From Octopus sinensis (Eukaryota): DNA of 64,000 bases. Position numbers and translations under genes: made by a program. Shown piece after piece: positions 3,625 through 56,655 of the stretch. The stretch is taken from assembly GCF_006345805.1 (NCBI RefSeq), contig NC_043007.1, forward strand, positions 14,012,001 to 14,076,000. The letters run 5' to 3'. The notes under the pieces are model-generated. The model was not told the origin of the DNA and ran no database searches. It was given only the letters and a program-made list of their open reading frames with translations. Within the stretch, counting starts at the first letter, position 1, and every line of letters starts with the position of its first letter.

Positions 3625-4020
3625 CTTTTCTACTCTAGGCACAAGGCCCAAAATTTTTCAGATAGGGGGCAGTCAATTAGACTGACCCAGCATGCAACTG
3701 ATACTTAATTTATCGACCCCTGAAAGGATAAATGGCAGAGTCGACCTGGGCAGAATTTGAACTCAGAACATAAAGACAGGTGAAATACCTATTTCTTTAC
3801 TATCCACAAGGGGCTAAACACAGAGAGGACAAACAAGGACAGACACATGGATTGTCGATTATATCGACCCCAGTGCGTAACTAGTACTTATTTAATCAAA
3901 CCTGAAATAATGAAAGGCAAAGTTGACCTCGGCGGAATTTGAACTCAGAACATAGCGGCAGACGAAATACTGCTAAGCATTTCGCCCAGTGTGCTAGCGT
4001 TTCTGCCAGCTCGCTGTCTT
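3625..4020 (-). mobile_element. SINE family A dimer (standard tail unit + alternative tail unit)
   Basis: Two body units joined at GAAATACCTATTTCTTTAC (3781); alternative tail CTACTCTAGGCACAAGGCCC at about 3630. Confidence 0.85.
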
Positions 4021-12639: not shown

Positions 12640-12775
12640 GGGCTTTCAGTTTCCATCTACCAAATCCGCTGACAAGGCTTTGGTCGGCCCGAGGCTATAG
12701 TAGAAGACACTTGCCCAAGGTGCCACGCTGTGGGACTGAAACCGGAACCATGTGGTTGGGAAGCAAGCTTCTTAT
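12640..12775 (-). mobile_element. SINE family B, 5' half
   Basis: TTTCAGTTTCCATCTACC...GGAACCATGTGGTTGGGAAGCAAGCT. Confidence 0.8.
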
Positions 12776-12960
12776 TTCTTTATTGCCCACAAGGGGCTAA
12801 ACGCAGAGAGGACAAACAAGGACAGACAAAGGGATTAAGTCGATTACATCGACTCCAGTGCGTAACTGGTACTTAATTTATCGACCTCAAAAGGATGAAA
12901 GGCAAAGTCGAAATATGGCTACGCATTTCGCCCGGCGTGCTAACATTTCTGCCAATTCTT
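12775..12960 (-). mobile_element. SINE family A, internally deleted
   Basis: TTATTTCTTTATTGCCCACAAGGGG...GGCAAAGTCGA joined to CGCATTTCGCCCGGCGTGCTAAC. Confidence 0.8.
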
Positions 12961-12989
12961 ACCATACAGCCACCTATATATATATATAT

Positions 12990-16348: not shown

Positions 16349-16754
16349 AAAGAGTATATATCCTATTTCATATCCATCGCAGCAATCTTTTAGAGGTGCT
16401 AACTAATTTTTCAGCTACCATCTTTCTATCTTTCTCGTTCATCACGCAATGTTGCCACTCGATTTGTAATATATTACGAACCACTTACCTGGCTTCCAGA
16501 AATCCGGAATTTCCACAAATCCGAGTATTCTGTACAACATCATGCAATATACTATACCCTGTATTGGGTAAACAAACCCTGGTTTTTGAAGCTGGTTAAT
16601 TTGCTTACGGTGTACTAAAAGTAGTTTTGAAGTGGATTGATCAGGATTAAACATATTCTACCTTAGAAACGTATTATTTTTTACCTTTACCTGTTAATTA
16701 AACTCATGTTCTTTATTTTTCTTCCTCTAATTTCCGTCCTGTAATCATTATACC

Positions 16755-17410
16755 TATTTCTTTACTACCCACAAGGGACAAACAAGGACAGACAAACGGA
16801 TTGAGTCGATTATATCGACCCCAGTACCAGTTATATACTGAGGTCGATGTTATCGACTTAATCCGTTTGTCTGTCTTTGTTTGTCTTCTCTGTGTTTAGC
16901 TGGTACTTATTTAATCGACCCCGAAAGGATGAGGCAAAGTCGACCTCGGCGGCGGAATTTGAACTCAGAACGCAGCGGCAGACGAAATACCTATTTCTTT
17001 ACTACCCACCAAGGGGCTAAACACAGAGAAGGGAAAGCAAGGACAGACAAACGGATTTAGAGTCGATTGTATCGACCTCCAGTGCGGAACTGGTACTTAT
17101 TTAATCGACCCCGAAAGATGAAGGCAATGTCGATCTCGGCGGAATTTGAACTCAGAACGCAGCGGCAGAGCGAAATACCTATTTCTTTACTACCCACAAG
17201 GGGCTAAACACAGAGAGGACAAACAAGGACAGACAAACGAATTTAGTCGATTGTATCGACCCCAGTGCGGAACTGATACTTAATTTATCGACCCCGAAAG
17301 GATGAAAGGCAAAGTCGACCTCGGCGGAGTTTGAACTCAGAACGTAGCGGCAGGCGAAAACCGCTAAGCATTTCGCCCGGCGTGCTAACGTTTCTGACAG
17401 CTTGCTGCCT
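16755..17410 (-). mobile_element. SINE family A tandem multimer (about 4-5 units)
   Basis: One head at about 17360-17410 plus repeated body units; junction GAAATACCTATTTCTTTAC at about 16984 and 17172. Confidence 0.88.
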
Positions 17411-23199: not shown

Positions 23200-23585
23200 T
23201 CTACTCAAGGCACAAGGCCCGAAATTTTGGGGGAGGGGGCAGTCGATTAGATCGACCCCAGTGCGTAACTGGTACTTATTTAATCGACCCCGAAAGTATG
23301 AAAGGCAAAGTCGACCTCGGCGGAATTTGAACTCAGAGCGTAAAGACAGCCGAAATACCTATTCTTTGCTACCCACAAGGGGCTAAACATAGAGTGGACA
23401 AACAAGGACAGACAAACGGATTAAGTCGATTATATTGACCCCAGTGCGTAACTGGTACTTAATTAATCGACCCCGAAAGGATGAAAGGCAAAGTCGAGGT
23501 CGCGGAATTTGAACTCAGAACGTAGCGGCAGGCGAAACACCGCTAAGCATTTCGCCCAGCGTGCTAACGTTTCTGCCAGCTCGCC
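23200..23585 (-). mobile_element. SINE family A dimer
   Basis: Head at about 23540-23585, junction at 23351, alternative tail at about 23200. Confidence 0.88.
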
Positions 23586-23629
23586 AGGCCTGAAAGAAAC
23601 TAACATAAATCACGTTTTTATAAATCTAC

Positions 23630-25104: not shown

Positions 25105-25500
25105 TTTTCTACTCTAGGCACAAGGGCTGAAATTTTGGGGAAAGGGGTACAGTCGATTGGATCGACTCCAGTACGCAACTGGTACTTATTTATCGACCCC
25201 GAAAGGATGAAAGGCAAAGTCGACCTCGGCGGAATTTGAATTCAGAGCGTACAGACAGACGAAATACCTATTTCTTTACTGCCCACAAGGGGCTAAACAC
25301 AGAGGGGACAAACAAGGACAGACAAACGGATTAAGTCGATTATATCGACCCCAGTGCATAACTGGTACTTGTTTAATCGACCCCGAAAGGATGAAAGGCA
25401 AAGTCGACCTCGGCGGAATTTGAACTCAGAACGTAAAGACAGACGAAATACGGCTTCGCATTTCGCCCGGCGTGCTAACGTTTCAGCCAGCTCGCCGCCT
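25105..25500 (-). mobile_element. SINE family A dimer
   Basis: Head at 25455-25500, junction at 25261, alternative tail at 25105. Confidence 0.88.
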
Positions 25501-28150: not shown

Positions 28151-28186
28151 CTTTTACGTTTCGAGCCTACGCTCTTCTCCAGAAAG
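28151..28186 (-). ncRNA. Hammerhead-like motif in solo pLTR-like fragment (about 28065-28215)
   Basis: Minus strand CUUU-CUGGAGA-A-GAGC GUAG GCUC-GAAACGUA-AAAG; perfect stems I and II, GUA cleavage triplet. Confidence 0.62.
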
Positions 28187-28212
28187 GGACACAGAAGAAA
28201 AAAACAAGGAAA

Positions 28213-28252
<40 letters not shown>

Positions 28253-28256
<4 letters not shown>

Positions 28257-28651
28257 TCAAACTCAACTGGACGTCCTGTTCGATCTTCATCTTCAAGGCT
28301 GAAATCTCCACTTCTGAATTTTGCAAACCATCTTCTACAAGTTCTTTCAGTCAAGCATTTTTTCCCATAAACTGAGTGTATGTTTCGAGTCGTTTCGGCT
28401 GCAGAGTTTCCTTTTTTGTACTCATAAAGTATTATGTGCCTCAAATACTCTTTGGATACTTCCATGTTAGATAGGGTTTTAATCAAAGAAATTTTAATTC
28501 TATTATTCTGTAAAATAATATCTAATTAGTTTAAATGTACACAAATGCATAAAAATAATTTTTAATTCCGTTAGACATTCTAAAATACTATTAAATTTCA
28601 TTCAATTTTAAAAAAGGTAAAACCGGACAGAACTCATGGGATGACCTGATA
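28253..28651 (-). mobile_element. Mariner transposon 5' fragment (TIR + HTH DNA-binding domain)
   Basis: MEVSKEYLRHIILYEYKKGNSAAETTRNIHSVYG..TERTCRRWFAKFRSGDFSLEDEDRTGRPVEFDD (ATG 28465), the mariner N-terminal signature; TIR TA-TCAGGTCATCCCATGAGTTCTGTCCGG at about 28620-28651; truncated at (TA)n. Confidence 0.92.
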
Positions 28652-31002: not shown

Positions 31003-31390
31003 TCTTTTCTACTATAGGCATAAGGGCCGAAATTTGGGGAGAGGGGGCACAGTAGATTTGATCGACCTCAACACATAACTGGTACTTAATTTATCGACCC
31101 CGAAAGGATGAAAGGCAAAGTCGACCTCGGCAGAATTTGAACTCAGAACGTAAAGACAGACGAAATACCTATTTCTTTATTACCCACAAGGGGCTAAACA
31201 CAGAGTGGACAAACAAGGACAGACATAGGTATTAAGTCGATTACATCGACTCCAGTCTGTAACTGGTACTTAATTTATCGACCCCGAAAGTATGAAAGGC
31301 AAAGTCGACCTCGGCGGAATTTGAACTCAGAACGTAGCGGCAGACGAAATACGGCTACGCATTTCGCCCGGCGTGCTAACGTTTCTGCCT
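31003..31390 (-). mobile_element. SINE family A dimer
   Basis: Junction at 31161, alternative tail at 31003, head to about 31390. Confidence 0.88.
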
Positions 31391-31429
31391 GCTATTAACA
31401 TAGTAACCATTGATAATTTACATAGGAAC

Positions 31430-33818: not shown

Positions 33819-34178
33819 TCAGTGATATTAACATAACAATCAATAATATTTCCACAGAAGTGAAGGATGTCTCAAACACTAGCAATGCTAATTTAACCGT
33901 CAATTATTCATATTTAATCAGTGATATTTCCATAATAATCAGTGGTATTTCACTATAATAATGCCTTTGTACAGAATTGTCTTTACACCTTTTCATTTCT
34001 TAACTTAGGTAAAAGGTTAACTGTTTTGAGGAGTGGTGAGCAGTCAATAGCATCGGCACAAGTACTTAACTCGTACTTTATGTTAACGGACTCGAAAGAA
34101 TGAAAGGCAAATTTAAACTCAGGACGTAAAGTCTGAAGAAACACTGCAAAGCAATATGTACGACATTCTAACGTTTCT

Positions 34179-34600
34179 TATTTCTTATTTCTTTATTGCC
34201 CACAAGGGGCTAGACATAAAAGGGACAAACAAGGACAGACAAACGGATTAGGTCGATTACATCGACCCCAGTGCGTAACTGGTACTTAATTTATCGACCT
34301 CGAAAGGATGAAAGGCAAAGACGACCTCGGTGGAATTTGAACTCAGAACATAAAGACAGACGAAATACCTATTTCTTTACTACCCACAAGGGGGTAAACA
34401 CAGAGGGGACAAACAAGGACAGACAAACGGATTAAGTCGATTACATCGACCCCAGTGCGTAACTGGTACTTAATTTATCAACCCCGAAAGGATGAAAGGC
34501 AAAGTCGACCTCGGCGGAATTTGAACTCAGAACGTAAAGACAGACGAAATACTGCTACGCATTTCGCCCGGCGTGCTAACGTTTCTGCCAGCTCGCCACC
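34179..34600 (-). mobile_element. SINE family A dimer, part of a chimeric insertion
   Basis: Head at 34555-34600, junction at 34361, (ATTTCTT)n tail at 34179-34195. Confidence 0.9.
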
Positions 34601-34603
34601 TTT

Positions 34604-34669
34604 TGGGTCCCCGGCAGGGAATCGAATCCCGGTCTCCCGCGTAACAGGCAGGGATACTTACCACTATAC
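34604..34669 (-). pseudogene. Retroposed tRNA-Asp fragment (5'-truncated, CCA-ended; anticodon GTC changed to GTT)
   Basis: Minus strand GTATAGTGGTAAGTATCCCTGCCTGTTACGCGGGAGACCGGGATTCGATTCCCTGCCGGGGAC-CCA closely matches metazoan tRNA-Asp(GTC) from about position 10 onward. Confidence 0.85.
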
Positions 34670-34759
34670 ATTCTAACGTTTCTGCCAGTTCATCGCCTTC
34701 GAAGCACCCCGAGGGGATAAATCTTTCACCTTTTACAACCATTACATGATATTCGTTTC

Positions 34760-34960
34760 GAATTTTTGCACAAAGCCAGCAATTTTGTGGGAGGGCGTAA
34801 CTCGAATACGTCTATCTCTGTGCTCAACTTGTACTTATTTTATCAACACAGAAACGATGAAAGGCAAAATCGACCTCAGCAGAATTAGAACTCGGAACGT
34901 AAAAGCAAACGAAGTGCAGCGAAGACCTACATGCTAACGACTTTGCCACCTCGCCACTTT
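34760..34960 (-). mobile_element. Old SINE family A
   Basis: Degenerate GATGAAAGGCAAAATCGACCTC..GCTAACGACTTTGCCACCTCGCCA. Confidence 0.7.
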
Positions 34961-35159: not shown

Positions 35160-38000
<2,841 letters not shown>

Positions 38001-44144: not shown

Positions 44145-44424
44145 AATATATATGTATATATATAATTTTATGTATATATGAATGAATGTACATATGTACA
44201 CGAAATACCTAATCAACAATACAGCTTTATATTCGTTCTGTAGCTAACACAAATATTGAGCTGCTGAACTGTTTGCGTTGAAATACGCATAAAATATCTA
44301 TTAAAGGTTTTTCTGTGTTCAAAGGTTTTTCTATGTTCAAATATAAAACTACTTAAAATCAAGCAAAAGCAAGGCTTGTGTGTCAAAATATATACACTGA
44401 CACAAGATTATTTCTTACGACATA

Positions 44425-44856
44425 GAAAATTTCTACATACATGCATGCCTACATACAGGCATGCATACATACATACAAACAAACAAACATACATACATGC
44501 ATGCATACATACATACATACATACATACATACATACATACATACATACATGCATACATACATACATACATACATACATACATACATACAAACAAACATAC
44601 ATACATGCATGCATACATACATACATACATACATACATACATACATACATACATGCATACATACATACATACATACATACAACAACATACATACATGCAT
44701 GCATGCATACATACATATATACATACATACATACATACATACATACATACATACACACACATACATACATACATACATACATACATACATACATACACAC
44801 ATACATACATACATACATACATAAATGCATGCGTACATACATATATATGCATGCAT
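44425..44856. repeat. (TACA)n microsatellite
   Basis: Directly visible. Confidence 0.95.
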
Positions 44857-46989
44857 TTCTGCTACAGGAAATTAAGAAGACTGTGGCAGAAACATTTAGC
44901 AGTTGAACCCGGATCACTATATCCGTTGTAGGATATACAACTTGAGAATCACGATTAGCTAGAATATTTGCTACGTCTTAGAATGTTTGATCATTCATGA
45001 CTTCGAGTGGAACAGGATGTAACAAAATTTCATCTTTGACGCGCTTTTTCTTAGCCCAACCACCATTATATTTCAGTGCATTTTAGCCACCACCAACCGA
45101 CGGTGGACGACAGGAATAAAGAGACAGTAACAGAAGCATTGTCTGGGCAGAGCGCTGTGCCGACACAGAAACAATGAACGAATGGCGATAGCAACACACA
45201 ATGACCAGCTAACATTCTGACAACTATTACTATCATACCTAGTTCAAAAACAGTAAGCTTCGAATTATTTGTTGTTTTATGGTTTGTAGTAACGAAAACA
45301 TTTTTTATTTACGTTAAGAATAAATATCCTTTTATCAAAAGCCTCAAGCAGATTTCAGTGTTTTTTTTTTTATCGCAACAAGGCTATAGTTACACATCAA
45401 TGTGTTTCATTAAGTGTATAACTGATGGCACCCATTTTCTCTTAAGCTATGTTTAACCATTCCTTTGTTTCTGCTCTTCTGCTTGATGCGCTGGGAAATA
45501 TGCCAGATATATGAAATACCGATAACAATGGTTCAGGATAAACACAACTGGTTTGCTCCGATTGTAGCACTCCGTGCTGAGAGTGTGTACCGGTTTACTC
45601 CAATTCTGCCTCTTTTCTCGGCTAGCAGTAACTGGAGTGGGAAACCTGTCAGACGAGGTACGTTCTTCTCTGGTCCCAGTTCCATTTACACTTATTTGAA
45701 TCATTGTTTTGCATCATTTCATTAATCAGTTAGGTTTATGCGGGTTTTCCCTCACACGAGTATTCTTTTCATGACACCCTCACTAGGAGGGCTACCAACC
45801 AAGACTAAAGTCGCCCGAGTGTTATTGTTGGGGATGCCTCGGGTATTATTATTACCAAGATCACAAACGAGATTGAAAAGATAGGGGTAAATGTGAAGAT
45901 AGGGCATCTACAGAAAACAGTCTTATTTGGAAACGTATGGATTGTCTGAATGAAAAGCGTTCGGAGAGCTGTCACGTTTTTGCATTCTCAAGTCAAGTGA
46001 CTCTGTTAAACAACAACAACAAGACGACCACATAAGGCTGAAATTTCGTAGGGGCTATTCGATTACACCAATCCCAATGCTCAGTTGGTCCTTAATTTGT
46101 CGACCCCTAAAGGATTAAGGGCAAAGTCGACCTCGGCGGAATTTGAACTCAAAACTTAAAGCCGGAGGAAATATTGCTAAACTATACACTTGTATATTGA
46201 ATATTTTCAAAAACAACAGGCAAAAGAAAAAACAAATACCAAAACGCTACTCAAGGTAGAGTAGAAGCAACTTTTTAGTAAAACCCTGTGAAACGCAAAC
46301 ATCTGATAGATGAATTTGTAATGAGAAAAATAACCTTTAAGTTTCCAAATTCATAGGTACGCATATTAAATTTAATTTACTAGTTTAATCATAACGCTGT
46401 TTTTTATTTTTATTTTTCTCCCACATGGGAACATTCTAAATTTGAAAGCAGGTAACGTTTCACTTACTGGCAGGGACTTCCCCACCAACGCTGCAAAAGC
46501 CGTTTCGGGTGGACATACTGAAGCCCATCAATGTGATTGACTGGCTACTTTCACTTTCCTTTTCCTCATGTACATTTCCACTCGTGGTTCCACATGTTTT
46601 CTTCTTTTCCACATTTCCCCGGTATATATTTGCAACATTCTAACTGCAACCACCTACTGAGCATATTTTTCATGTTTTCACGCCCCATACCCAAGTGAAT
46701 TTCGTGCAAGGCGTTTCTATTTGCTTTTGCTGATGTTGTATTAGTTGTATTACAGCGTATGTGTACCGCTGCGTATACCTGTGTGCGTATGTGTGTACGT
46801 GTGTGTATGTGAGGGCGAGTATGTCTATATGCGTGTGTATATTATGTATGTGATCACAAGCATTACTAATTCCGCATATAAACGTTTCATATTGCCAGCA
46901 CTTAAGGAGGTTAGTGCGATCGCTTACAAGAGTTTTCATACGCATATTCACACACATGCATAGGTATCCATGAATACACACATATATAG

Positions 46990-47099: not shown

Positions 47100-47500
47100 A
47101 ATCCTTTCTACTATAGGCACAAGACCTGAAATTTGGTGGGGAGACTAGTCGATTACATCGACCCCAGTGTTTCACTGGCACATATTTTACCGACCCCGAA
47201 AGGATAAAAAGCAAATTCGACGACGGTGGAATTTGAACTCAGAACGTAGCGGCAGACGAAATACCTATTTCTTTACTACTCACAAGGGGCTAAACATAGA
47301 GAGGACAAACAAGGACAGACAAACGGATTAAGTGGATTATATCGACCCCAGTGCGTAACTGGTACTTATTTAATCAACCCCTAAAGGATGAAAGGCAAAG
47401 TCGATCTCAGTGGAATTTGAACTCAGAACGTAGCGGCGGACGAAATACCTCTAAGTATTTCGCCCGGCGAGTTAATGATTCTGCCAGCTCGCCGCCATAA
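47100..47500 (-). mobile_element. SINE family A dimer
   Basis: Alternative tail at 47100, junction at about 47258, head to 47500. Confidence 0.88.
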
Positions 47501-49189: not shown

Positions 49190-49585
49190 TATTTATTTCT
49201 TTATTGCCCACAGGGGGCTAAACATAGAGGGGACAAACAAGGACAGACAAAAAGATTAAGTCGATTATTTCGACCCCAGTACATAACTGGTACTTATTTA
49301 ATCGACTCCGAAAGGATGAAAGGCAAAGTCGACCTCGGCGGAATTCGAACTCAGAACGTAACGGCAGACGAAATACCTGTATCTTTACTACCCACAAGGG
49401 GCTAAACATAGAGGGGACAAACAAGGACAGACAAACGGATTAAGTCGATTATATCGACCCCAGTGCGTAACTGGTACTTAATTTATCGACCCCAAAAGGA
49501 CGAAATGAATGTCGACCTCAGCGGCAGACGAAATAACGCTAAACATTTGGCCCGGCGTACTAACGATTCTGCCAGCTCGCCCTCC
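49190..49585 (-). mobile_element. SINE family A dimer
   Basis: Two body units, junction at about 49371. Confidence 0.88.
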
Positions 49586-55678: not shown

Positions 55679-56067
55679 TATGCATATTTATTATAAACGC
55701 AAAAGAACACCACGGAGGAATCGACGTAAGCTTAATAATAAACCACGATATGTGAACTGTGATATGACGAGAGATAATTGTACAACAGAATCCGATAGCC
55801 CGATCGATACAGTGACAAAGAAACAACCAATTATCTTATGAACTTCATTAACTTGGAGCTGTTTCACAGCCGTAAGCTAATGAACTAATCGTTTGTTTCT
55901 TTGTCTTTTCTTTGCTCTTATTATTGCTCCGTGCTCGACTAACACTTCGCTCAGAGAAGCCTACAAATTAGTTCTACACCTGGTAGTTAGTATATCGCAC
56001 CGTTTTAGGACGTAGTTACATTATGATCTGTCTGTGGAATTTATGCTTTTGTCTTATATTCTGAATA

Positions 56068-56655
56068 TATATTTCTTTACTACTCACAAGGGGTTAAACA
56101 TAGAGGGGACAAACAAGGAACAGACTAAGGGATTAAGTCGATTACATCGACCCCAGTGCGAAACTGGTACTTTATTTTAATTGACCCCGAAAGGATGAAA
56201 GGCAAAGTCGACCTGGGCGGAATTTGAACTCAGAACGTAACGACAGACGAAATACCTATTTCTTTATTACCCACAAGGGACTAAACAGAGAGGGGACAAA
56301 CAAGGACAGACATAGGTATTAAGTCGATTACATCGCCCCCAGTGCGTAAATGATACTTAATTTATCGACCCCGAAAGGATGAAAGGCAAAGTCGACCTGG
56401 GCGGAATTTGAACTCAGAACAAAGCGACAGACGAAATACCTAAGGGGCTAAACACAGAGGAGACAAACAAGAACAGACAGACGGGCTAAGTCGATTACAT
56501 CGACCCCAGTGCGTAACTGGTACTTAATTTATCGACCCCGGAAGGATGAAAGGCAAAGTTGACCTCGGCGGAATTCGAACTCAGAACGTAGCGACAGACG
56601 AAATACCGTTAAGCATTTCGCCCGGCGTGCTAACATCTCTGCCAGTTCGCTGCCT
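56068..56655 (-). mobile_element. SINE family A trimer
   Basis: Three body units, junctions at about 56250 and 56433, single head at 56610-56655. Confidence 0.88.

What the first reader, a model, noticed from the sequence alone, without database searches (positions are those of the whole stretch)
34163..34683. Chimeric retrogene: mature tRNA-Asp fused to a SINE dimer inside one 16-bp TSD
On the minus strand, a 5'-truncated tRNA-Asp ending in CCA (34669-34604) is joined directly to the head of a SINE A dimer and its (AAGAAAT)n tail. The whole unit is flanked by ACATTCTAACGTTTCT at 34163-34178 and 34668-34683 and interrupts an older SINE A in its A-box region. CCA is added post-transcriptionally in eukaryotes, so the simplest model is a LINE RT jumping from SINE RNA onto a mature tRNA in one insertion event, analogous to U6-L1 chimeras. 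It adds new pol III boxes upstream of a SINE and could represent a route to new SINE heads (inference).
Basis: partly seen in the sequence, partly recalled or inferred. Interest (0 to 1): 0.75.

Follow-up and report, generated by a model that had tools for sequence, protein, structure and literature searches.

The report
Mature tRNA-Asp fused to SINE retrocopy
A decayed copy of a processed aspartate tRNA, still carrying its added CCA end, is joined to the front of a short mobile element, and both were inserted together into an older element; this is a clean single example of reverse-transcriptase template switching, a known process thought to give SINEs new heads.

Summary
An exact 16-bp repeat (34163-34178 and 34668-34683) flanks a 489-nt insert on the minus strand. 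Removing the insert plus one repeat copy restores an older, diverged SINE.

The insert reads as follows:
- tRNA-Asp positions 10/12-73, then CCA in register. It matches human tRNA-Asp+CCA at 59/66 without gaps.
- AAA.
- The exact 5' end of the local SINE family.
- Two 184-nt SINE units.
- An (AAGAAAT) tail.

Fourteen other SINE heads in the window start at the same base, with unrelated flanks and no tRNA. Copies with a recognisable target-site duplication (TSD) have 9-25 bp, and several have 3-6 extra A-rich bases before the head. The TSD length, dimer, tail and AAA spacer are therefore normal for the family; only the tRNA is unusual.

Best explanation (about 0.7): one target-primed reverse transcription event. 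The LINE enzyme copied the SINE RNA to its 5' end, jumped onto the 3' CCA end of mature tRNA-Asp and stopped in the D arm.

I could not reach paralogues, orthologous sites or the host's tRNA-Asp genes, so a pre-existing chimeric master copy is not excluded. This is a new member of a known kind (U6/L1, snRNA/Alu and tRNA/L1 chimeras; the PittSINE model). Interest is moderate.

The parts
34668..34683 (.). Target-site duplication, copy on the 5' side of the element. On the minus strand it reads AGAAACGTTAGAATGT. Its last two bases (GT) could equally be tRNA positions 10-11.
   Evidence: Exact 16-mer with only two copies in the window. It is part of the older SINE's A-box-like region.
34607..34667 (-). 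5'-truncated tRNA-Asp body, positions 12-73 (10-73 if the GT of the TSD is counted). The D arm, anticodon arm (anticodon now GTT) and T arm are present.
   Evidence: Rfam tRNA model positions 10-63, 26.4 bits. 59/66 identities to human tRNA-Asp-GTC+CCA, ungapped, score 97 against shuffles of 13.4 +/- 2.2.
34604..34606 (-). CCA at tRNA positions 74-76, the post-transcriptionally added 3' end.
   Evidence: In register in the ungapped alignment to tRNA-Asp+CCA. That eukaryotic nuclear tRNA genes do not encode CCA is established knowledge.
34601..34603 (-). AAA spacer between the tRNA's CCA and the SINE head.
   Evidence: Direct reading. Other copies carry 3-6 extra, mostly A-rich bases (TAA, GAA, TTAA, TAAA, GTTTAT) between TSD and head.
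34553..34600 (-). Full-length 5' head of the SINE (GGTGGCGAGCTGGCAGAAACGTTAGCAC...). It starts at the family's normal first base.
   Evidence: Alignment of 14 other heads in the window; their flanks diverge immediately upstream of GGCGGCGAG.
34369..34552 (-). SINE unit 1 (184 nt), containing the B-box-like GAGTTCAAATTCC.
   Evidence: TRF period 184; BLAST self-hits and unit alignment.
34179..34368 (-). SINE unit 2 (92% identical to unit 1), ending in the tail AAAGAAATAAGAAATA (34194-34179).
   Evidence: c12964 shows the same GGGCAATAAAGAAATAAGAA ending and c49584 a similar one, GGGCAATAAAGAAATAAATA.
34163..34178 (.). Target-site duplication, copy on the 3' side. Its first five bases (AGAAA) match the tail repeat, so 11-16 nt are true duplication.
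   Evidence: The inferred first-strand nick on the + strand is ...GTTTCT^GCCAG.
33994..34162 (-). 3' part of the older, diverged SINE that received the insertion.
   Evidence: Colinear alignment of the reconstructed empty site with c61225, c22350 and other copies.
34684..34697 (-). 5' part of the older SINE head (GGCGATGAACTGGC), upstream of the insertion.

Best explanation
This is a single LINE-mediated insertion, a chimeric retrocopy built from two RNAs.

1. The partner LINE's endonuclease nicked the + strand at ...GTTTCT^GCCAG, inside an old SINE (inferred).
2. The freed 3' end TTTCT paired with the (AAGAAAU)n tail of a dimeric SINE RNA and primed reverse transcription (inferred; the microhomology is shown).
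3. The enzyme copied the SINE RNA to its very 5' end, including the few A's this family often carries there.
4. Instead of stopping, the enzyme continued on the 3' CCA end of a mature tRNA-Asp and copied it back to the D arm, positions 10-12. This end-to-end template jump is inferred. Joining of a separately made tRNA cDNA cannot be told apart from it.
5. The cDNA end was joined to the other side of a staggered break with 0-2 nt of microhomology (GT), giving the 16-bp duplication.

The product is a dead-on-arrival or barely competent pseudogene. Since insertion it has decayed: the SINE part differs from the window consensus by 3.7%, and the tRNA part has 5-7 changes in 66 nt. There is no sign that it has a function.
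For: - The exact 16-bp TSD encloses tRNA plus SINE, with only two copies in the window. Deleting the insert and one copy restores a colinear SINE.
- The tRNA homology ends exactly at the A of CCA (positions 74-76). The SINE starts exactly at the family's 5' terminus, as defined by 14 other heads. RNA end is joined to RNA end.
- No second TSD or A-rich tail separates the two parts.
- The family behaves like a LINE-dependent SINE. Its other copies have TSDs of 9-25 bp, the same tail and 0-6 extra bases at the 5' junction. TSD length, tail, dimer and AAA are therefore all ordinary for the family.
- The tail and the start of the TSD share AGAAA, as expected for target-primed reverse transcription.
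- None of the 14 other heads has tRNA-Asp-like sequence upstream. One of them, c12964, carries the same subfamily marks.
- The model has precedent: template switching from a SINE RNA to tRNA-Asp was proposed for PittSINE (PMC5729268); snRNA/Alu and U6/L1 chimeras are known (PMC4494074); tRNA/L1 chimeras with 9-19 bp TSDs have been reported (bioRxiv 10.1101/2025.02.02.635956).
- The 5' end at G10-A12 lies just 3' of position 9, which carries m1A in human tRNA-Asp (PMC6800469). m1A blocks reverse transcriptases (my own knowledge). This point is suggestive only.
Against: - It is a single locus. No paralogue, orthologue or host tRNA-Asp gene could be retrieved.
- CCA in register would arise by chance about 1 time in 64 in a random 3' trailer. 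That is good evidence but not overwhelming.
- The discriminator base is C, not the G73 expected for tRNA-Asp, so one extra substitution must be assumed.
- The tRNA part looks somewhat more diverged (7/66 against human, perhaps 5/66 against the host's own tRNA) than the SINE part (3.7%) and the TSD (0/32). By my own Poisson estimate, not a tool result, P is about 0.1. This would also fit a chimeric master that aged before this copy was made.
- If m1A58 was present, it was read through without a trace, so the modification-stop argument is weak.
Confidence: 0.7

Rival explanations
1. This is a daughter copy of an already existing chimeric master. The tRNA-Asp-CCA/SINE fusion arose earlier at another locus by the same kind of template switch, was transcribed from the tRNA's internal pol III promoter, and this copy is an ordinary 5'-truncated retrotransposition of it. 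That would make it a young SINE subfamily with a tRNA-Asp head.
For: - The tRNA part appears more diverged (5-7 of 66) than the SINE part (3.7%) and the perfect TSD.
- 5' truncation at positions 10-12 would then need no special cause.
- PittSINE shows that such heads can take over (PMC5729268).
Against: - None of the 14 other SINE heads in 64 kb has the tRNA.
- c12964 shares the subfamily marks but lacks the tRNA.
- The excess divergence is not significant (my own Poisson estimate, P about 0.1) and is measured against human tRNA, not the host's.
Confidence: 0.15
2. This is read-through or 5' transduction. A SINE copy sat immediately downstream of a genomic tRNA-Asp gene, a pol III transcript that began in the tRNA gene ran into the SINE, and this transcript was retrotransposed.
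For: tRNA genes are strong pol III promoters. 5' extensions taken from the master's flank are known for other SINEs (SINEU-2, PMC4494074).
Against: - It requires CCA to follow the discriminator by chance (about 1/64), because eukaryotic tRNA genes do not encode CCA.
- It requires a SINE whose first base lies within 3 nt of the tRNA end.
- It requires no T-run terminator in between; none is present.
Confidence: 0.07
3. There were two separate events or a DNA-level rearrangement. Either a tRNA retropseudogene and a SINE inserted one after the other at the same spot, or a tRNA-derived DNA fragment was captured as filler during break repair or recombination between SINE copies.
For: - The target and the inserted SINE share CTGGCAGAAACGTTAG, so homology that could drive recombination is present.
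- Filler DNA at 5' junctions is common in this family.
Against: - Neither part has its own TSD. The only TSD encloses both.
- The 16-mer carries the old SINE's private variant AGAATGT in both copies, so it is duplicated target sequence, not two different SINE copies.
- Precise RNA-end-to-RNA-end joining is not expected from recombination.
Confidence: 0.08

Closest known systems
U6/L1 and other small-RNA chimeric retrogenes, including snRNA/Alu (Buzdin 2002, 2003; Garcia-Perez 2007, as cited in PMC4494074 and PMC5729268)
   Same: - A bipartite insert lies inside one TSD.
- The 3' partner is a retroelement with its normal tail, and the 5' partner is a small pol III RNA in the same orientation.
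- The small RNA is joined at its own 3' end.
- The accepted explanation is template switching during target-primed reverse transcription.
   Different: - The 3' partner here is a full-length SINE multimer, not a 5'-truncated L1.
- The tail is an (AAGAAAT)n-type repeat, so the enzyme is probably not an L1-type poly(A) user.
- The 5' partner is a tRNA carrying CCA.
- The host is clearly not a mammal. It may be a cephalopod, but that is only my impression from the repeats and was not tested.
tRNA/LINE-1 chimeric insertions in primates (bioRxiv 10.1101/2025.02.02.635956)
   Same: tRNA sequence is co-inserted with a retroelement inside TSDs of 9-19 bp, and the tRNA is truncated.
   Different: Those tRNA pieces are mostly 5' halves (positions 1-37) in antisense orientation and are attributed to twin priming. 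Here the tRNA is in sense orientation, keeps its 3' part up to CCA, and is joined to a SINE rather than a LINE.
PittSINE origin model (Suh et al. 2017, PMC5729268)
   Same: The proposed mechanism is the same: the reverse transcriptase switches from a SINE RNA to tRNA-Asp, and the result is a tRNA-Asp-headed composite flanked by a TSD.
   Different: PittSINE is an amplified family whose founding event was inferred after the fact, and its tRNA replaced the old head. Here a single unamplified locus still shows the junction, with CCA and the complete old head retained behind the new tRNA.
HaSE3 (5S rRNA + tRNA-SINE chimera, PMC3272025) and SINEU 5' additions (PMC4494074)
   Same: A small RNA is added to the 5' end of an existing SINE, and template switching is the explanation given.
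   Different: Those are multi-copy families. Their small RNAs are 5S or U1/U2 rather than a tRNA, and no CCA-type mark of RNA maturity is available.
Strong-stop DNA model for tRNA-derived SINEs with retained CCA (Ohshima and Okada, recalled from memory, not read here)
   Same: CCA retained inside a SINE is taken as proof that a mature tRNA, not a tRNA gene, was the source.
   Different: In that model the tRNA is a retroviral primer and is followed by LTR-derived sequence. Here CCA is followed by the sense-strand 5' end of a SINE inside a LINE-type TSD, which fits a template jump rather than tRNA priming.

Membership tests
Chimeric retrocopy made by template switching during LINE-type target-primed reverse transcription | One target-site duplication encloses both parts, and neither part has its own. 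| tested here: met
   Exact 16-bp repeat at 34163-34178 and 34668-34683, the only two copies in the window. No internal repeat flanks either part.
Chimeric retrocopy made by template switching during LINE-type target-primed reverse transcription | The 3' partner is a retroelement with its normal 3' tail next to the TSD. | tested here: met
   The SINE dimer ends in AAAGAAATAAGAAATA directly before the TSD. The same ending is seen in c12964 and a similar one in c49584.
Chimeric retrocopy made by template switching during LINE-type target-primed reverse transcription | The 5' partner is in the same orientation and is joined at its RNA 3' end. | tested here: met
   The tRNA alignment ends at A76 of CCA, 3 nt before the SINE's first base.
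Chimeric retrocopy made by template switching during LINE-type target-primed reverse transcription | The insertion is absent from the pre-insertion allele, so the empty site is intact. | tested here: met
   This was tested only by reconstruction. Joining the flanks gives a colinear old SINE. No real empty allele from another individual or species could be obtained.
Chimeric retrocopy made by template switching during LINE-type target-primed reverse transcription | Both parts arrived in the same event, with no intermediate alleles. | not testable with these tools
   The host genome and related genomes are not in the searchable collections.
Copy of a mature (processed) tRNA-Asp | Sequence and cloverleaf of tRNA-Asp. 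| tested here: met
   59/66 identities to human tRNA-Asp-GTC. The Rfam tRNA model aligns the D, anticodon and T arms. The anticodon is now GTT through one C>T change.
Copy of a mature (processed) tRNA-Asp | CCA at positions 74-76 that is not encoded by the gene. | tested here: inconclusive
   CCA is present in register. Whether the host's tRNA-Asp genes lack CCA could not be checked; for eukaryotes this is assumed from general knowledge.
Copy of a mature (processed) tRNA-Asp | Discriminator G73. | tested here: not met
   Position 73 is C. It needs a post-insertion G>C change or a host-specific difference.
SINE (short LINE-dependent retroposon), the 3' partner | Many short non-coding copies with a common 5' end, a common 3' tail and variable TSDs. 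| tested here: met
   About 17 copies in 64 kb, a common start at GGCGGCGAG, and TSDs of 9-25 bp.
SINE (short LINE-dependent retroposon), the 3' partner | A head derived from tRNA, 7SL or 5S RNA with pol III A and B boxes. | tested here: inconclusive
   B-box-like GAGTTCAAATTCC and A-box-like TGGCAGAAACGTTAG are visible. Rfam's tRNA model does not match the SINE heads at E<=10.
CORE-SINE (for example octopus OR2, PMC4758252) | The conserved CORE central domain. | tested here: not met
No curated CORE model was available, so this is a weak test.
New SINE family with a tRNA-Asp head (PittSINE-like) | Multiple copies sharing the same tRNA/SINE junction. | tested here: not met
   The tRNA piece is unique in the window and absent upstream of the 14 other heads. 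The genome-wide count could not be made.

The most novel reading that the evidence does not exclude
This locus, or a sister copy elsewhere in the genome, is the founder or an early member of a new SINE subfamily with a tRNA-Asp head, caught before the old head was lost. The retained CCA would be direct physical proof that SINE heads can be acquired from mature tRNAs by template jumping. The 5' end at position 10 would record a reverse-transcriptase stop at a modified base 9 in vivo.
Probability: 0.1. Interest if true: 0.65.

Novelty: new member of a known kind. Interest (0 to 1): 0.4.

Why it matters
How SINEs acquire new pol III heads has mostly been inferred from amplified families, long after the founding event. 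A single unamplified insertion that still shows the following features is a clean fossil of that step, here in a non-mammalian genome with a non-poly(A) LINE partner:
- the full old SINE;
- the new tRNA in front of it;
- the CCA that marks the tRNA as processed;
- one enclosing TSD.

It also suggests a simple genome-wide screen: search for tRNA 3' end + CCA followed by the SINE 5' end. That screen would measure how often this reverse transcriptase switches templates and onto which RNAs. The locus itself is almost certainly non-functional.

Tried and rejected
1. A metagenome scan for the junction pattern GGGGANCCA(N0-8)GGCGAGCTGGCAG gave 9 hits. All are chance matches in unrelated, mostly GC-rich DNA, with no SINE or tRNA around them.
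2. Scans of genome contigs and viral contigs for the SINE B-box region gave 0 hits.
3. A protein search with the 71-aa ORF that spans the junction found no candidate. Five exact-product look-ups for ORFs at or near the site, meant to fetch the locus from other assemblies, all returned 'not on record'.
5. I asked whether the older SINE also carries a tRNA-Asp 3' fragment in its 24 extra 5' bases (CCCC..GGGG motif). The alignment is not better than shuffles, with P of 0.11-0.14. Rejected as unsupported.
6. I asked whether the SINE is a CORE-SINE such as octopus OR2. Left open.
7. The whole-window Rfam search at E<=1 returned microsatellite-driven miRNA noise in the 150 rows listed, none above its gathering score, and no tRNA.
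8. tRNA priming (the strong-stop model) was considered and rejected. It does not explain the sense orientation of the SINE after CCA, the tail next to the TSD, or the LINE-type TSD.

Full report
**1. What is there**

On the minus strand the region reads as follows:

| Window coordinates | Sequence or feature |
|---|---|
| 34697-34684 | older SINE head, GGCGATGAACTGGC |
| 34683-34668 | AGAAACGTTAGAATGT (TSD copy) |
| 34667-34607 | ATAGTGG...GCCGGGGAC (tRNA-like) |
| 34606-34604 | CCA |
| 34603-34601 | AAA |
| 34600-34553 | SINE head, GGTGGCGAGCTGGCAGAAACGTTAGCAC... |
| 34552-34369 | SINE unit 1 |
| 34368-34179 | SINE unit 2, ending in AAAGAAATAAGAAATA |
| 34178-34163 | AGAAACGTTAGAATGT (TSD copy) |
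| 34162-33994 | rest of the older SINE |

The 16-mer is exact. It occurs only at these two places in the window and does not extend on either side. TRF reports the 184-nt period (2.0 copies, 92% matches) and the 7-nt tail repeat.

**2. The tRNA piece is real and is tRNA-Asp**

- ARAGORN finds no tRNA in the window, as expected for a truncated, mutated copy.
- Rfam's tRNA model matches 34669-34615: model positions 10-63, 26.4 bits, E=0.0098 for the 2-kb search. The D, anticodon and T arms align.
[quoted passage not shown] The alignment is ungapped from position 10 to the final A of CCA, with 59/66 identities. It scores 97, against 13.4 +/- 2.2 (maximum 27) for shuffles.
- The seven differences are:
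  - G>A in the D loop and A66>C. From memory these positions vary between animals, so they are probably host-specific.
  - C29>T and C64>T, both at CpG sites.
  - C36>T, so the anticodon now reads GTT.
  - G53>A, in the B box.
  - G73>C, the discriminator.
- The homology stops exactly at CCA.

**3. The SINE part is an ordinary member of a local family**

- BLAST of the insert against the window finds about 17 copies.
- Fourteen other heads were examined. Full-length ones start at GGCGGCGAGCTGG and the sequences upstream are unrelated to each other. This defines the SINE's 5' terminus at 34600.
- Copies with a recognisable TSD have 9-25 bp. Several carry 3-6 extra bases between TSD and head: TAA, GAA, TTAA, TAAA, GTTTAT.
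- Multimers of the 184-nt unit, always joined at ...GTAAAGAAAT|AG|GTATTTCG..., are common: dimers, a trimer and a 3-4-mer.
- The ending GGGCAATAAAGAAATAAGAA recurs in c12964, and c49584 ends similarly.
- The dimer, the tail, the TSD length and the AAA spacer are therefore all normal for this family. The tRNA is the only unusual element.
- The SINE part differs from the window consensus by 3.7%, against 5-9% for the other copies. It is a comparatively young insertion.

**4. It is one insertion into an older SINE**

- Joining the flanks with a single copy of the 16-mer gives a sequence that aligns colinearly with other SINE copies across the junction...CTGGCAGAAACGTTAGAATGT|CGTACATATTGC... against c61225 ...CTGGCAGAAACGTTAGCATGCCGTACAAAATGC....
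- Both copies of the 16-mer carry the old SINE's private variant AGAATGT. They are therefore duplicated target sequence, not two different SINE copies.
- There is no second TSD and no tail between the tRNA and the SINE.
- The first five bases of the 3'-side TSD copy (AGAAA) match the tail repeat. The true duplication is therefore 11-16 nt. On the + strand the primer end ...TTTCT^ could pair with the RNA tail. This is what target-primed reverse transcription predicts.

**5. Mechanism**

The junction joins the real 3' end of a processed tRNA to the real 5' end of a SINE RNA. The simplest reading is an end-to-end template jump by the LINE reverse transcriptase within one insertion event, followed by 5' joining with 0-2 nt of microhomology (GT).

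- Shown: the anatomy, the single TSD, the colinear empty site, and the position of the RNA termini.
- Inferred: the jump itself (as opposed to ligation of a separately made tRNA cDNA), the identity of the enzyme, and the timing.
- One speculative detail. The copy begins at tRNA positions 10-12, just 3' of position 9. Human tRNA-Asp is the only known cytosolic tRNA with m1A9 (PMC6800469), and m1A blocks reverse transcriptases (my own knowledge). Nothing is known about this host, and m1A58, if it was present, left no trace. I give this little weight.

**6. Rival explanations**

- (a) A chimeric master copy elsewhere, with this locus as a 5'-truncated daughter. This is not excluded. The tRNA part looks somewhat more decayed than the SINE part and the perfect TSD, but the excess is not significant (my own Poisson estimate, P about 0.1, not a tool result) and is measured against human tRNA. 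No other head in the window carries the tRNA.
- (b) Read-through from a tRNA-Asp gene with a SINE just downstream. This needs CCA by chance (about 1/64) and a SINE within 3 nt of the tRNA end.
- (c) Two separate insertions or a DNA-level rearrangement. This is contradicted by the single enclosing TSD and by the RNA-end-to-RNA-end junction.

**7. External evidence could not be obtained**

- The junction pattern gave only chance hits in metagenomes.
- The SINE is absent from the prokaryotic-genome and viral collections.
- The junction ORF has no homologues.
- Five exact-product look-ups failed.
- No paper in the library contains the SINE strings I searched for.
- The host is therefore unnamed. 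The repeats remind me of cephalopod genomes, but I did not test this. A CORE-SINE (octopus OR2) relationship was not supported by a crude test.

**8. Comparison with what is known**

- Chimeric retrocopies made by template switching are well documented: U6/L1 and snRNA/Alu (cited in PMC4494074), and tRNA/L1 at 21 primate loci, mostly antisense 5' halves (bioRxiv 10.1101/2025.02.02.635956).
- SINE-to-small-RNA switching has been proposed as the origin of HaSE3 (PMC3272025) and of bipartite-LINE-derived SINEs (PMC5786205).
- It has also been proposed, specifically with tRNA-Asp as the acceptor, for PittSINE (PMC5729268).
- This locus fits that class on every defining feature I could test. Within it, it is a distinct example: the tRNA is in sense orientation, its 3' part is retained up to CCA, the 3' partner is a full-length SINE multimer, and the tail is not poly(A).
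- It is not a new kind of element.

**9. Verdict**

- Novelty: a new member of a known kind.
- Function: none expected.
- Interest: moderate (0.4). Its main value is as a clean fossil of the proposed head-acquisition step and as a seed for a genome-wide screen.

Noticed in passing
window 34698-34734 and 33980-33993 (minus strand): The older SINE that was hit has its own putative TSD, AAAAGGTG(T)AAAGA (13 of 14; P about 0.01 against shuffles). It encloses 24 extra bases, TTTATCCCCTCGGGGTGCTTCGAA, in front of the old SINE's head. This would be a second 5'-extended copy. The extra piece is unique in the window, and its faint likeness to a tRNA 3' end is not significant.
   Followed up: partly
window 49190-49584, 56065-56654, 16750-17409; also 3640-4018, 23215-23588, 25125-25499, 31025-31400, 47125-47496: SINE copies come as one to four tandem 184-nt units, always joined at the same point (GTAAAGAAAT|AG|GTATTTCG). 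Many are hetero-dimers whose last unit has a different 3' end (...CCCCAAAATTTCGGGCCTTGTGCCTAGAGTAGAAAAGAAT). The copy at 16750-17409 also contains an inverted segment. Either multimeric masters exist, or the reverse transcriptase re-initiates or switches templates often.
   Followed up: partly
window 34752-34960 (minus strand): Another SINE of a related subfamily lies directly upstream of the old SINE. It has its own TSD, ATGTAATGGTT[C/G]TAAA. Three generations of SINE insertions therefore sit within about 1 kb.
   Followed up: partly
window 12765-12964 (minus strand): This SINE copy shares the finding's subfamily marks (head GGTGGC, ending GGGCAATAAAGAAATAAGAA) and has an internal deletion. 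Its head contains an unexplained 14-nt stretch, TGTATGGTAAGAAT, in place of GAGC.
   Followed up: no
window 28154-28486 (minus strand): An ORF fragment carries the HTH_48 domain of Mos1/mariner transposases (Pfam E=1.3e-23). It runs into a (TA)n microsatellite and is probably a dead mariner-like element.
   Followed up: partly
window 35182-35621, 36250-36960, 44400-44900 and many others: Long (ATAG)n, (CATA)n-type and (TA)n microsatellites fill much of the window. They produce dozens of spurious sub-threshold Rfam miRNA matches (mir-297, mir-3149 and others) and long low-complexity ORFs.
   Followed up: no
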